A stretch of 64,000 bases of DNA from IMG/VR virus record IMGVR_UViG_3300028558_000791, positions 124,001-188,000 of that record; one strand, 5' to 3'. The position numbers and the translations under genes are program-made. The notes beneath the pieces are model-generated. The model searched no databases and was not told the DNA's origin. It saw only the letters and a list, made by a program, of their open reading frames with translations. Below are positions 48,799-48,918 of this stretch, one piece after another (within the stretch, counting starts at the first letter, position 1; each line of letters opens with the position of its first letter).

Positions 48799-48918
48799 GC
48801 CCCAGTAGCTCAGTAAAATCCGAAAGCGCCCGTGAACGTGACGGGAAAGAAAGTAAGGTTATGAAAGAGCAGCCAGTATTTAACTGGACGGAGGGTGGTG
48901 CGAATCCACCCTGGGGCT
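48799..48918 (+). ncRNA. tRNA-like RNA with a ~45-nt D-loop expansion (nominal anticodon UUU)
   Basis: GCCCCAG/CTGGGGC acceptor, GCTC/GAGC D-stem, CCAG/CTGG anticodon stem, GGTGG/CCACC T-stem; non-canonical loops, no CCA. Confidence 0.65.

What the first reader, a model, noticed from the sequence alone, without database searches (positions are those of the whole stretch)
48799..48918. tRNA-like RNA with a large structured insertion in the D-loop
Seen: perfect 7-bp acceptor, 4-bp D-stem and 5-bp T-stem. The D-loop is about 55 nt and contains a CCCGT-GAACGTG-ACGGG hairpin and A-rich linkers. The anticodon loop is TATTTAA (A33 instead of U33), the T-loop is TGCGAAT, and there is no CCA. It ends 5 nt before suppressor tRNA 1. 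Intact stems argue against decay. Inference: it could be a tRNA-Lys(UUU) mimic or decoy for anticodon nucleases, a tRNA with a non-canonical intron spliced by the phage PNK/ligases, or a new ncRNA class.
Basis: partly seen in the sequence, partly recalled or inferred. Interest (0 to 1): 0.65.

Follow-up and report, generated by a model that had tools for sequence, protein, structure and literature searches.

The report
Megaphage tRNA-like RNA with elbow arm
A 120-base RNA gene in a half-megabase soil phage keeps the tRNA cloverleaf but carries a conserved 55-base structured arm where the D-loop should be; it most likely acts as a tRNA look-alike off the ribosome, and its partner is still unknown.

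Summary
It is not chance or decay. Ten distinct homologs from related ~0.43-0.51 Mb soil, sediment and peat megaphage contigs all keep the insertion. On their alignment 95% of pair cells are paired, and 20 of 31 pairs show changes on both sides, including both helices inside the insertion.

The insertion is a rod-like arm in place of G18/G19. It has two covarying helices, two AGUA/GAA-type internal loops and an invariant apical loop, GAACGUG. The T loop is invariably UGCGAAU (UGC, not UUC).

The "anticodon" is not conserved: it reads UUU, GCU, AAU or GAU, sometimes in 8-nt loops. Position 33 is A in six of the eight 7-nt loops. Only U36-A37-A38 is fixed.

The core is closest to the phage's own tRNA-Thr. 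The genome has no splicing endonuclease or RtcB, and contigs from RNA libraries carry the insertion unspliced.

My reading is a new family of tRNA-derived, non-decoding structured RNA. It is probably cut out of the tRNA/tmRNA operon transcript like a tRNA and works as a tRNA mimic. The partner is unknown; an anticodon-nuclease decoy or a non-ribosomal tRNA remain open. The intron and tRNA-Lys readings are not supported.

The parts
48799..48918 (+). Whole tRNA-like RNA gene (120 nt including discriminator T48918)
   Evidence: Read. Covariance models R1 and R2 score 160.9 and 140.7 bits. It is a single copy in the 480-kb genome.
48799..48805 (+). Acceptor stem, 5' strand; pairs with 48911-48917
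   Evidence: 7 of 7 pairs. 5 of the 7 pairs show changes on both sides among the 10 homologs, and 100% of cells are paired.
48808..48811 (+). D stem, 5' strand (GCTC); pairs with 48867-48870 (GAGC). U8 A9 lie at 48806-48807 and A14 at 48812
   Evidence: Three pairs are invariant. Pair 13-22 switches from C-G to A.A together with position 46 (G to A) and pair 15/48 (G.G to A-U) in three homologs.
48812..48866 (+). The 55-nt insertion: a structured arm that replaces the G18G19 part of the D loop
   Evidence: Retained in all 10 homologs. It holds helices H2 and H3 and the conserved motifs AGUA, GAAAG, GAACGUG, AAGUA and UAUGA.
48817..48820 (+). Arm helix H2, 5' strand (AATC); pairs with 48857-48860 (GGTT). 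A fifth pair, 48821/48856, is C.A here but paired in some relatives
   Evidence: Predicted independently by RNAalifold. 4 of its 5 pairs show changes on both sides.
48829..48845 (+). Arm helix H3 (CCCGT/ACGGG) with apical loop GAACGTG (48834-48840)
   Evidence: All 5 pairs show changes on both sides and 100% of cells are paired. The loop is invariant in 9 of 10 homologs; L013 has AACACGUG.
48822..48828 (+). Internal loop 2, 5' strand (GAAAGCG), facing 48846-48855 (AAAGAAAGTA). GAA opposite AGUA is a loop-E / sarcin-ricin-like signature. Internal loop 1 is AGTAA (48812-48816) facing ATGAAA (48861-48866)
   Evidence: GAAAG and AGUA are present in all homologs. The loop-E assignment is inferred from the sequence signature and was not tested.
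48872..48888 (+). Anticodon-like arm: stem 48872-48876 / 48884-48888, loop TATTTAA 48877-48883
   Evidence: 4 of the 5 stem pairs show changes on both sides. The loop varies among homologs (UAUUUAA, UAGCUAA, CGCAAUAA, UAUGAUAA, UUGAUAA) and only the last three bases, UAA, are invariant.
48894..48910 (+). T arm: stem GGTGG/CCACC, loop TGCGAAT (48899-48905), with G at position 55
   Evidence: The loop is invariant in all 10 homologs. One RNA-library variant has C at 48899. 2 stem pairs show changes on both sides.
48924..48997 (+). Neighbouring tRNA(CUA) amber-suppressor-type gene, 5 nt downstream. It is context, not part of the RNA
   Evidence: ARAGORN and Rfam tRNA (49.2 bits) call it. A tRNA of this type follows the element in 8 of 10 homolog loci (not called by ARAGORN in L027). 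It does not follow in L037 or L039.
45036..45063 (+). Candidate operon promoter (TTGACA-16-TATAAT, 12 of 12 matches) ahead of the four tRNA-Thr genes, the tmRNA, small ORFs, the element and the tRNA(CUA) genes
   Evidence: Consensus scan. No comparable promoter or terminator lies next to the element, so co-transcription is inferred.

Best explanation
The element is a gene for a tRNA-derived, non-decoding structured RNA. It defines a new family in a clade of roughly half-megabase soil and sediment megaphages.

Shown:
- It keeps a tRNA cloverleaf and the tRNA core signature: U8, A14, G45, and co-switching 13-22-46 and 15-48 positions.
- The part of the D loop that normally holds G18/G19 is replaced by a conserved arm. 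The arm has two covarying helices, two AGUA/GAA-type internal loops and an invariant GAACGUG apical loop.
- The T loop is invariably UGCGAAU.
- The anticodon position drifts (UUU, GCU, AAU, GAU; 7- or 8-nt loops; A33 in six of the eight 7-nt loops). Only U36-A37-A38 is fixed.
- The core is most similar to the phage's own tRNA-Thr(AGU), 3.3 kb upstream.

Inferred:
- It is transcribed as part of the long tRNA-Thr/tmRNA/ORF/tRNA(CUA) operon.
- The retained acceptor/T-arm minihelix lets RNase P cut its 5' end; the phage encodes its own RNase P RNA.
- RNase P cleavage of the next tRNA, plus trimming, would define the 3' end. One of the phage's two PolyA_pol-family (CCA-adding-type) nucleotidyltransferases could then add CCA.
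- The mature ~120-nt RNA folds into an L-shaped tRNA-like body with an arm projecting from the elbow. The altered elbow and T loop keep it away from normal decoding.
- It acts in trans as a tRNA mimic that binds a tRNA-recognising protein of the host or the phage. The drifting anticodon loop and the conserved arm would be the contact surfaces.
- It is an accessory gene; some close relatives lack it.
For: Conservation and covariation:
- Ten distinct homologs were found.
- On alignment A9, 95.1% of 305 pair cells are paired and 20 of 31 pairs show changes on both sides. 0 of 500 shuffles reach the observed values. Slid controls reach at most 53% paired and at most 5 such pairs.
- RNAalifold found arm helix H2 independently.

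Not a decoding tRNA:
- No RF00005 hit at E<=10 and no ARAGORN call.
- The anticodon loop varies, while the T loop UGCGAAU and the apical loop are invariant.
- With the arm removed in silico, ARAGORN assigns Lys, Ser or Ile to different orthologs.
- The phage already has a canonical tRNA-Lys(UUU).

tRNA origin and core:
- The best non-self matches of the models are tRNA-Thr in the phage (38.7 bits) and tRNA-Thr in T4.
- Positions 13-22-46 and 15-48 switch as a block.

Independent gene:
- It is not followed by a tRNA in L037 or L039.

Processing context:
- Phage RNase P RNA, 272.5 bits.
- Two PolyA_pol-family genes.
- A perfect promoter-like site at 45036-45063, and none next to the element.

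Precedent:
- UGC in place of UUC in the T loop marks the staphylococcal tRNA-Gly species that bind EF-Tu-GTP and ribosomes poorly (PMC7826273, read).

RNA libraries:
- Two metatranscriptome assemblies hold the element contiguous with its flanks and with the arm intact.
Against: - No mature RNA ends, abundance or partner are known. The RNA-library contigs may derive from contaminating DNA and cannot show processing.
- Overall sequence identity of the element is no higher than that of the neighbouring ORF in several pairs, for example 76% against 75.5%. Selection is visible in the structure and the loops, not in overall identity.
- The core co-switch (13-22-46, 15-48) occurs in one subclade and may be a single event.
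- A9 was aligned to the model, which favours the structure.
- The gene is missing in several relatives, so any function is dispensable or replaceable.
- The loop-E assignment and the elbow geometry are inferred from sequence only.
Confidence: 0.6

Rival explanations
1. It is a non-ribosomal (non-proteinogenic) tRNA. It is CCA-tailed and aminoacylated but kept off EF-Tu and the ribosome by its UGC T loop and elbow arm. It donates its amino acid to a phage or host aminoacyl-tRNA-dependent transferase.
For: - It has an intact 7-bp acceptor stem, a discriminator base and a tRNA core.
- The invariant UGC in the T loop matches the staphylococcal non-proteogenic tRNA-Gly species (PMC7826273).
- The phage encodes CCA-adding-type enzymes and a PTH2-like hydrolase 0.7 kb upstream.
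Against: - The genome has no FemAB-family transferase and no class IIb synthetase core.
- The acceptor stem is not conserved in sequence (G1-C72 C2-G71 C3-G70 against G1-C72 A2-U71 G3-C70 or U3-A70) and the anticodon drifts. No single synthetase identity set is evident.
- Aminoacylation was not tested.
Confidence: 0.1
2. It is a cis-acting leader for the adjacent amber-suppressor tRNA. A tRNA-shaped module would guide folding, RNase P processing or timing of tRNA(CUA) expression, with no role of its own.
For: - In 8 of 10 homolog loci it lies 4-6 nt upstream of one type of tRNA(CUA).
- No promoter or terminator separates them.
Against: - In L037 an ORF follows the element. In L039 it lies upstream of the 106-aa ORF, about 0.9 kb from the nearest tRNA(CUA).
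- The same tRNA type exists without the element in L019.
- Invariant loops and a covarying 50-nt arm exceed what a processing spacer needs.
Confidence: 0.1
3. It is a working elongator tRNA with an exotic D arm that reads ANN codons (AAA/AAG in this phage).
For: - The cloverleaf has canonical stem lengths, a 5-nt variable loop, U8, A14 and U36-A37-A38.
- ARAGORN calls tRNA-Lys(UUU) once the arm is removed in silico.
- One ortholog (L037) has a canonical U33 loop, UUGAUAA.
Against: - The anticodon would switch among Lys, Ser and Ile between close relatives with no matching change of identity elements.
- A33 stands in six of the eight 7-nt loops, and two orthologs have 8-nt loops.
- G55 replaces U55, and there is no G18G19.
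- The window's copy has a G.A at pair 27-43.
- A canonical tRNA-Lys(UUU) already exists in the genome.
- The gene is dispensable in relatives.
Confidence: 0.07
4. It is an interrupted tRNA gene. The 55 nt are an intron cut out and religated by phage enzymes (Rnl1-type ligase) to give a ~70-nt tRNA.
For: - The phage encodes a T4 Rnl1-type RNA ligase at window 27054-27659.
- The insertion sits inside a loop and is itself structured.
Against: - No tRNA-splicing endonuclease (PF01974) and no RtcB.
- No group I or other ribozyme match at E<=10.
- The conserved motifs are in the insertion, not in the exons.
- The GG that could serve as G18G19 after splicing is absent in several orthologs.
- The exons alone remain non-canonical.
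- RNA-library contigs are unspliced and no joint skips the insert. This last point is weak, because contigs drop rare forms.
Confidence: 0.04
5. It is a decaying tRNA-Thr duplicate that picked up junk sequence and has no function.
For: - Patchy distribution among relatives.
- Overall identity is similar to that of neighbouring coding DNA.
Against: - 95% of pair cells are kept and 20 pairs change on both sides.
- Three loops stay invariant across homologs whose helices have turned over.
Confidence: 0.03

Closest known systems
Bacteriophage T4 stable RNAs, species 1 (rnaC, 139 nt) and species 2 (rnaD, 119 nt)
   Same: Both are small stable phage RNAs of unknown function encoded inside a tRNA gene cluster (annotation of NC_000866). 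rnaC ends in a tRNA-like T arm, with the two RNA ends paired to each other (fold). The size is similar.
   Different: There is no detectable homology: model R1 gives 5.5 bits on rnaC and nothing on rnaD. In the T4 RNAs the body between the acceptor-like stem and the T arm is not a cloverleaf with a D-loop arm.
Canonical bacterial and phage elongator tRNA (Rfam RF00005), in particular tRNA-Thr
   Same: It has a 7-bp acceptor stem, a 4-bp D stem, a 5-bp anticodon stem, a 5-nt variable loop, a 5-bp T stem, U8, A14, G45 and U36-A37-A38. The best model cross-hits are tRNA-Thr genes.
   Different: A 55-nt arm replaces G18G19. The T loop is UGC, not UUC. A33 is common, the anticodon is not conserved, and there is no RF00005 or ARAGORN call.
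Non-proteogenic tRNA-Gly isoacceptors of Staphylococcus (cell-wall pentaglycine synthesis)
   Same: [quoted passage not shown] The element has an invariant UGC.
   Different: Those are otherwise normal 75-nt tRNAs with a fixed UCC anticodon, charged by GlyRS and used by Fem transferases. Here there is no FemAB gene, the anticodon drifts and the D arm is huge.
Bacterial Y RNA-like RNAs (YrlA, RF02553) with a tRNA-like module, partners of Ro/Rsr
   Same: Both are tRNA mimics that are not translated. The phage does encode a TROVE/Ro-like protein.
   Different: The YrlA model gives only a 13.7-bit spurious hit spanning the element's T arm and the next tRNA's D arm. In YrlA the RNA ends form the Ro-binding stem, not an acceptor stem. 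Relatives that lack the element still carry the TROVE gene. A weak separate YrlA-like hit lies elsewhere in the genome.
Phage tRNAs that counter tRNA-targeting defences (T5 tRNA-Lys against PARIS; tRNA-Tyr against retron effectors; anticodon-loop variants)
   Same: Both are phage-encoded tRNA-shaped molecules with unusual anticodon loops. They are accessory and fast-evolving (PMC10264068, PMC11464382, PMC11555353; titles and abstracts listed).
   Different: Those are functional replacement tRNAs that still decode. This RNA looks unable to decode and would have to act as a decoy or inhibitor, which has not been shown.

Membership tests
Elongator tRNA (Rfam RF00005) | Scores at or above the family's gathering threshold (29 bits), or is called by a tRNA finder | tested here: not met
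   No RF00005 match even at E<=10 on 48700-49000, while the neighbouring tRNA scores 49.2 bits. ARAGORN finds nothing, with or without its intron option.
Elongator tRNA (Rfam RF00005) | D loop of about 7-11 nt with G18G19, and a T loop U54-U55-C56 that together form the elbow | tested here: not met
   The D loop is 55 nt, and the only GG (48857-48858) lies in helix H2 and is absent in several orthologs. The T loop is UGCGAAU in all 10 homologs.
Elongator tRNA (Rfam RF00005) | 7-nt anticodon loop with U33, and an anticodon conserved among orthologs | tested here: not met
   A33 stands in six of the eight 7-nt loops. Two orthologs have 8-nt loops. The anticodon position reads UUU, GCU, AAU or GAU.
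Elongator tRNA (Rfam RF00005) | Cloverleaf stem lengths and core tertiary positions (U8, A14, 15-48, 13-22-46) | tested here: met
   Stems are 7/4/5/5 with a 5-nt variable loop. U8, A14 and G45 are invariant. Positions 15-48 and 13-22-46 switch together.
Intron-containing tRNA (archaeal-type endonuclease/ligase splicing, or self-splicing intron) | A splicing endonuclease and ligase are available, or the intervening sequence is a ribozyme | tested here: not met
   PF01974 and RtcB are absent from the 480-kb genome. Only an Rnl1-type ligase is present. No intron or ribozyme family matches at E<=10.
Intron-containing tRNA (archaeal-type endonuclease/ligase splicing, or self-splicing intron) | A spliced RNA product exists | tested here: inconclusive
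   Contigs from two RNA libraries carry the insert and no joint skips it. Contigs drop rare forms, and the libraries may contain DNA.
YrlA / Y RNA-like (RF02553) | Matches the family model. The RNA ends form the Ro-binding stem, and the RNA co-occurs with Ro | tested here: not met
   13.7 bits against a gathering score of 69, and the hit spans two genes. The ends form an acceptor stem instead. The TROVE gene is present in relatives that lack the element.
T4 rnaC / rnaD stable RNAs | Sequence and structure homology to the T4 RNAs | tested here: not met
   Model R1 with filters off gives 5.5 bits (E 1.7) on rnaC and no hit on rnaD.
T4 rnaC / rnaD stable RNAs | Stable RNA excised from a phage tRNA-cluster transcript | not testable with these tools
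   The location in a tRNA/tmRNA operon is shown. Excision and stability need RNA-end data.
Non-proteogenic tRNA (staphylococcal tRNA-Gly type) | UGC/UGU instead of UUC in the T loop | tested here: met
   UGCGAAU is invariant. The feature is described in PMC7826273.
Non-proteogenic tRNA (staphylococcal tRNA-Gly type) | Aminoacylated and used by an aminoacyl-tRNA-dependent transferase | not testable with these tools
   No FemAB family gene is in the genome. Other transferase families were not searched, and charging needs a bench test.

The most novel reading that the evidence does not exclude
The RNA is a phage counter-defence decoy. It is a tRNA-shaped bait whose anticodon loop (UUU, GCU, GAU or AAU, mostly with A33, always with U36-A37-A38) tracks the specificity of host anticodon nucleases or other tRNA-targeting immune effectors. 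The conserved elbow arm and UGC T loop keep it off the ribosome, and may trap or inhibit the nuclease. This would be the first dedicated non-decoding tRNA decoy, as opposed to the replacement tRNAs known so far.
Probability: 0.15. Interest if true: 0.85.

Novelty: new variant of a known kind. Interest (0 to 1): 0.62.

Why it matters
tRNA-shaped RNAs that do not decode are few. They include tmRNA, Y-RNA-like RNAs, viral tRNA-like structures and the T4 species 1/2 RNAs, and each has revealed a distinct piece of biology.

This one has a topology I could not find described. A conserved helical arm grows out of the exact spot where the D loop should lock onto the T loop. It is paired with a T-loop change otherwise known from tRNAs kept off the ribosome.

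It belongs to phages that carry an unusually complete RNA toolkit: 57 tRNAs, a tmRNA, their own RNase P RNA, a Ro-like protein, CCA-adding-type enzymes, an RNA ligase and suppressor-type tRNAs. It is therefore a handle on how megaphages manipulate or protect the tRNA pool.

The family is small, well defined and strongly covarying. It is directly testable by RNase P processing, structure probing, pull-downs and nuclease assays in laboratory strains.

Tried and rejected
- GenBank phage collection (blastn, distant mode): only generic tRNA similarity to the two tRNA(CUA) genes, and no relative of the element.
- Exact-pattern scans of IMG/VR with three segments found only one other record.
- The first GTDB genome scan found nothing. 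The second, with a gapped pattern, gave 10 places, none confirmed by the model. L038 from IMG/VR was likewise a chance match.
- Four of the seven metagenome pattern hits were chance matches in coding DNA.
- Ro/Y-RNA link: the phage has a TROVE gene, but so do relatives without the element. Rejected as a specific partner.
- T4 rnaC/rnaD homology: rejected.
- Pairing between the element's loop and the CUA anticodon loop of the neighbouring tRNA: inspected by eye in four orthologs. No consistent register, so it was dropped.
- A T-loop/apical-loop contact (G55-C56 with C-G or U-G of GAACGUG) cannot be tested by covariation, because both loops are invariant. The single U54-to-C variant is compatible with it but proves nothing.
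- Tree of the upstream 106-aa protein, to count gains and losses: too poorly resolved (1 well-supported branch of 13). Presence/absence is no more clustered than in shuffles.
- TAG recoding as context: the genome reads mostly in the standard code, so I named no other code.
- Variants seen only as difference tables from sequencing runs (X5, X23, X24) were read by hand. They were not rebuilt as sequences or sent to other tools, and they are not in the pair counts.
- One script call returned no answer and was repeated.
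Full report
WHAT IS THERE

The window is bases 124001-188000 of a 480,838-bp IMG/VR virus record with 43% G+C. The genome carries 57 tRNA genes and a tmRNA.

- a perfect 7-bp acceptor stem (48799-48805 with 48911-48917) and discriminator T48918;
- U8 A9;
- a 4-bp D stem (48808-48811 with 48867-48870);
- 55 nt between the D-stem strands;
- an anticodon-like arm (48872-48888) with loop UAUUUAA;
- a 5-nt variable loop;
- a 5-bp T stem with loop UGCGAAU (48894-48910);
- no encoded CCA;
- 5 nt of spacer before a tRNA(CUA) at 48924-48997.

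Neither ARAGORN nor the Rfam tRNA model, even at E<=10, recognises it. No other Rfam family matches. The 13.7-bit YrlA hit spans the element's T arm and the next tRNA's D arm and is spurious. Alone, the sequence folds with z = -3.0.

IT IS A CONSERVED FAMILY

I fetched relatives through the upstream 106-aa ORF, through DNA patterns and through covariance models R1 and R2. This gave ten distinct copies:
- the window;
- L009, L003, L013;
- L020 (identical to L021 and L022);
- L023 (identical to L024);
- L027, L028, L037 and L039.

L012 is identical to the window's copy. The copies come from soil, rhizosphere, peat, sediment and freshwater assemblies. Several sit on contigs of 200-500 kb; related contigs of 427-511 kb lack the element. 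About 20 sequencing studies hold near-identical stretches. The genome itself has one copy.

On alignment A9 the six helices have 95.1% of 305 pair cells paired. 20 of 31 pairs show a change on both sides, and 57 cells carry such a change. None of 500 column shuffles reaches these values. Sliding the 3' partners by 1-3 columns drops pairing to 31-53% and the both-sides pairs to 0-5. By helix, the pairs with changes on both sides are:
- acceptor stem: 5 of 7;
- anticodon-like stem: 4 of 5;
- T stem: 2 of 5;
- inner arm helix H3: 5 of 5;
- outer arm helix H2 (48817-48820 with 48857-48860): 4 of 5.

RNAalifold predicted H2 independently on a smaller alignment. One caveat: A9 was aligned to the model. 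Overall identity of the element is similar to that of the neighbouring ORF (for example 76% against 75.5%, and 64% against 68%). Selection therefore acts on structure and on a few motifs.

ANATOMY OF THE INSERTION

The 55 nt form an arm that continues the D stem, in this order:
- internal loop 1, AGUA(A) facing (U)AUGAA;
- helix H2, 4-5 bp;
- internal loop 2, GAAAG... facing ...AAGUA;
- helix H3, 5 bp here, and lengthened by about 3 more pairs with a bulge in five of the ten homologs (L020, L023, L027, L037, L039);
- an apical loop GAACGUG, identical in 9 of 10 copies.

AGUA opposite GAA is the sequence signature of loop-E / sarcin-ricin (bulged-G) modules. That assignment is my inference and was not tested.

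The arm leaves the cloverleaf after A14-R15-U16-R17, which is where G18 and G19 would sit. The normal D-loop/T-loop lock of the tRNA elbow therefore cannot form in its usual way.

The T loop is UGCGAAU in all ten copies. One RNA-library variant has C at its first position.

The tRNA core looks intact. U8, A9, A14 and G45 are invariant. Positions 13-22-46 and 15-48 switch together: C-G-G with G.G in seven copies, and A.A.A with A-U in three. This may be one evolutionary event.

NOT A DECODING tRNA AND NOT SPECIFICALLY LYS

The loop of the anticodon-like arm reads:
- UAUUUAA in five copies;
- UAGCUAA in L023;
- CGCAAUAA in L027;
- UAUGAUAA in L028 and L039;
- UUGAUAA in L037.

Only the last three bases, U36-A37-A38 in tRNA numbering, are fixed. 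When I cut the arm out in a script, ARAGORN called Lys(UUU), Ser(GCU) and Ile(GAU) for three orthologs and nothing for the other six. A decoding tRNA would not change amino-acid identity among close relatives. The phage also has a normal tRNA-Lys(UUU).

The core is most similar to the phage's own tRNA-Thr(AGU) at window 45411-45486 (38.7 bits with R1; best pairwise score). In T4 the best cross-hit is again tRNA-Thr. The likely origin is a duplicated tRNA-Thr gene of the same cluster.

NOT AN INTRON

- The genome lacks a tRNA-splicing endonuclease and RtcB. It does have an Rnl1-type ligase.
- The insertion carries the family's most conserved motifs.
- The GG that might serve as G18G19 after excision is lost in several orthologs.
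- The exons alone would still have UGC in the T loop and, in most orthologs, A33.
- Laying assemblies of two metatranscriptome libraries on 48600-49300 gave a 333-nt contig and an 1827-nt contig. Both carry diverged copies of the element with the arm intact, contiguous with the ORF end and the tRNA(CUA). No joint skips the arm.

Such contigs can derive from DNA and drop rare forms. This last point is therefore weak evidence for transcription, and only mild evidence against splicing.

GENOMIC SETTING

A perfect TTGACA-16-TATAAT site at 45036-45063 precedes the following genes, in this order:
- four tRNA-Thr genes;
- the tmRNA (46047-46403);
- an M23 peptidase;
- a PTH2-like peptidyl-tRNA hydrolase;
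- small ORFs;
- the element;
- two tRNA(CUA) genes;
- tRNA-Arg(CCU);
- IF3.

There is no convincing promoter or terminator next to the element, so it is probably made as part of a long transcript and cut out.

Elsewhere the phage encodes a class-A RNase P RNA (272.5 bits) and two PolyA_pol-family (CCA-adding-type) nucleotidyltransferases. RNase P recognises the acceptor/T-arm stack, which the element keeps. This is established knowledge of RNase P substrates, applied here by inference.

In 8 of 10 loci the element sits 4-6 nt upstream of one type of tRNA(CUA). In L027 that tRNA was read by eye and is not called by ARAGORN. In L037 an ORF follows the element. In L039 the element lies upstream of the 106-aa ORF. 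The same tRNA type also occurs without the element in L019. The element is therefore a gene in its own right.

It is accessory. Close relatives lack it at the syntenic site: L002/L017/L018, L004-L006, L019, L025, L026, L029 and L032. Records G002 and G003, 62% and 83% complete, have no copy anywhere in the assembled part.

WHAT IT MOST LIKELY DOES

I commit to a non-decoding tRNA mimic, with confidence 0.6. It would be processed like a tRNA, fold into an L-shaped body with an arm projecting from the elbow, and act in trans by binding a tRNA-recognising protein off the ribosome.

The UGC T loop has a precedent. The staphylococcal tRNA-Gly species that bind EF-Tu-GTP and ribosomes poorly, and that feed cell-wall synthesis, have TGC/TGT instead of TTC there (PMC7826273).

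Two more specific versions remain open.
- A non-ribosomal aminoacyl-donor tRNA. No FemAB gene and no class IIb synthetase core are present.
- A decoy for host tRNA-targeting defences. This would fit the patchy distribution and the drifting bait-like loop. The literature on phage tRNAs against PARIS, retron effectors and anticodon nucleases is listed.

Neither version is shown. A cis role for the suppressor tRNA, a true elongator tRNA, an intron and a pseudogene are the less likely rivals. The evidence for each is in the rival list.

COMPARISON WITH KNOWN RNAs

The nearest analogues by lifestyle are the T4 species 1 and 2 RNAs, which lie in the T4 tRNA cluster. T4 rnaC has a tRNA-like T arm with paired ends, but there is no homology.

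The element is not a YrlA/Y RNA. The model, the topology and co-occurrence with the TROVE gene all fail.

Full-text searches for enlarged D loops or D arms, and for tRNA-like RNAs in phages, found no description of such an arm.

I rate it a new variant of a known kind: tRNA-derived non-decoding RNAs. The family and its topology are new.

LIMITS

- No host, no RNA ends and no partner are known.
- The variants from sequencing runs (X5, X23, X24) were read only from the difference tables. They were not rebuilt or passed to other tools.
- No other genetic code was assumed, because the genome reads well in the standard code.

Noticed in passing
G000:56887-57250 (+), outside the window (locus L035:8887-9250): The phage genome encodes a full-length bacterial class-A RNase P RNA (272.5 bits; gathering score 100). 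Related records G002 and G003 have it too (280 and 271 bits). A virus-encoded RNase P RNA conserved across a megaphage clade deserves its own look.
   Followed up: partly
G000:about 35668-37419 (+); also G000:45921-46030 (+) (locus L034:15921-16030): A 583-aa TROVE/Ro60-like ORF scores 39.6 bits summed. It is also present in relatives G002 and G003. About 8.5 kb downstream, inside the large tRNA cluster, there is a weak full-length YrlA (Y RNA-like) match: 24.2 bits against a gathering score of 69. This may be a phage Ro/Y-RNA pair.
   Followed up: partly
window 48924-48997 and 49183-49255; G000:50073-50149: The genome has two tRNA(CUA) genes and one tRNA(UUA) gene, which are amber- and ochre-suppressor types. 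No tRNA-Trp(CCA) was called among the 57 tRNAs, and the first tRNA(CUA) resembles a phage tRNA-Trp. Yet the genome reads mostly in the standard code: 92% is covered by >=100-aa frames. Most in-frame TAGs of long TAG-read frames lie at their 5' edge. A few mid-frame TAGs at 438-444 kb were not examined.
   Followed up: partly
window 46047-46403 (+): A phage-encoded tmRNA (142 bits) with tag peptide ANDNAFAMAA. Relatives carry tags ANDNAFAPVSLAA and ANDNAFAPLALAA.
   Followed up: no
window 46644-47135, 47788-48084 and 50816-51445 (+): In the same operon as the element: an M23 peptidase, a PTH2-type peptidyl-tRNA hydrolase (27.7 bits) and a full IF3 (N and C domains, E 4e-32 and 7e-26). Together they form a translation-related module.
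   Followed up: no
window 27054-27659 (+) (G000:151054-151659): A T4 Rnl1-type RNA ligase domain (PF09511, 49.1 bits) in a 424-aa frame. The genome has no RtcB and no tRNA-splicing endonuclease. I did not look for PNK.
   Followed up: no
G000:258639-259010 (-) and G000:229261-229659 (+): Two PolyA_pol-family (CCA-adding-enzyme type) nucleotidyltransferase genes, 129 and 51 bits.
   Followed up: no
L027:1741-1814: In this relative the tRNA(CUA) behind the element has C33 and a D loop without GG. ARAGORN does not call it, so it may be degenerating or altered.
   Followed up: no
G000:44573-44666, 43429-43515, 76761-76844, 42728-42801 and 41562-41644: Several oddly long or irregular tRNA calls: Ile(UAU) of 94 nt, Asn(GUU) of 87 nt, Gly(UCC) of 84 nt, and one with a 2-base anticodon. 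A further tRNA is found by Rfam (54.7 bits) but by ARAGORN only when an 8-nt intron is allowed.
   Followed up: no
L019-L023 and L027-L029, downstream of the first tRNA(CUA); L025:297-923: Relatives carry a quinolinate synthase (NadA) gene just behind the first tRNA(CUA), between the two tRNA(CUA) genes where both are seen. The window has only a 49-aa ORF there. One relative has a GIY-YIG/NUMOD3 homing-endonuclease gene nearby. The region is a hotspot for insertions.
   Followed up: no
window 48471-48791 (+): The 106-aa ORF upstream of the element has no Pfam match. It defines a family of 104 protein clusters restricted to these megaphage contigs, and one weak hit is labelled Kitasatospora.
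   Followed up: partly
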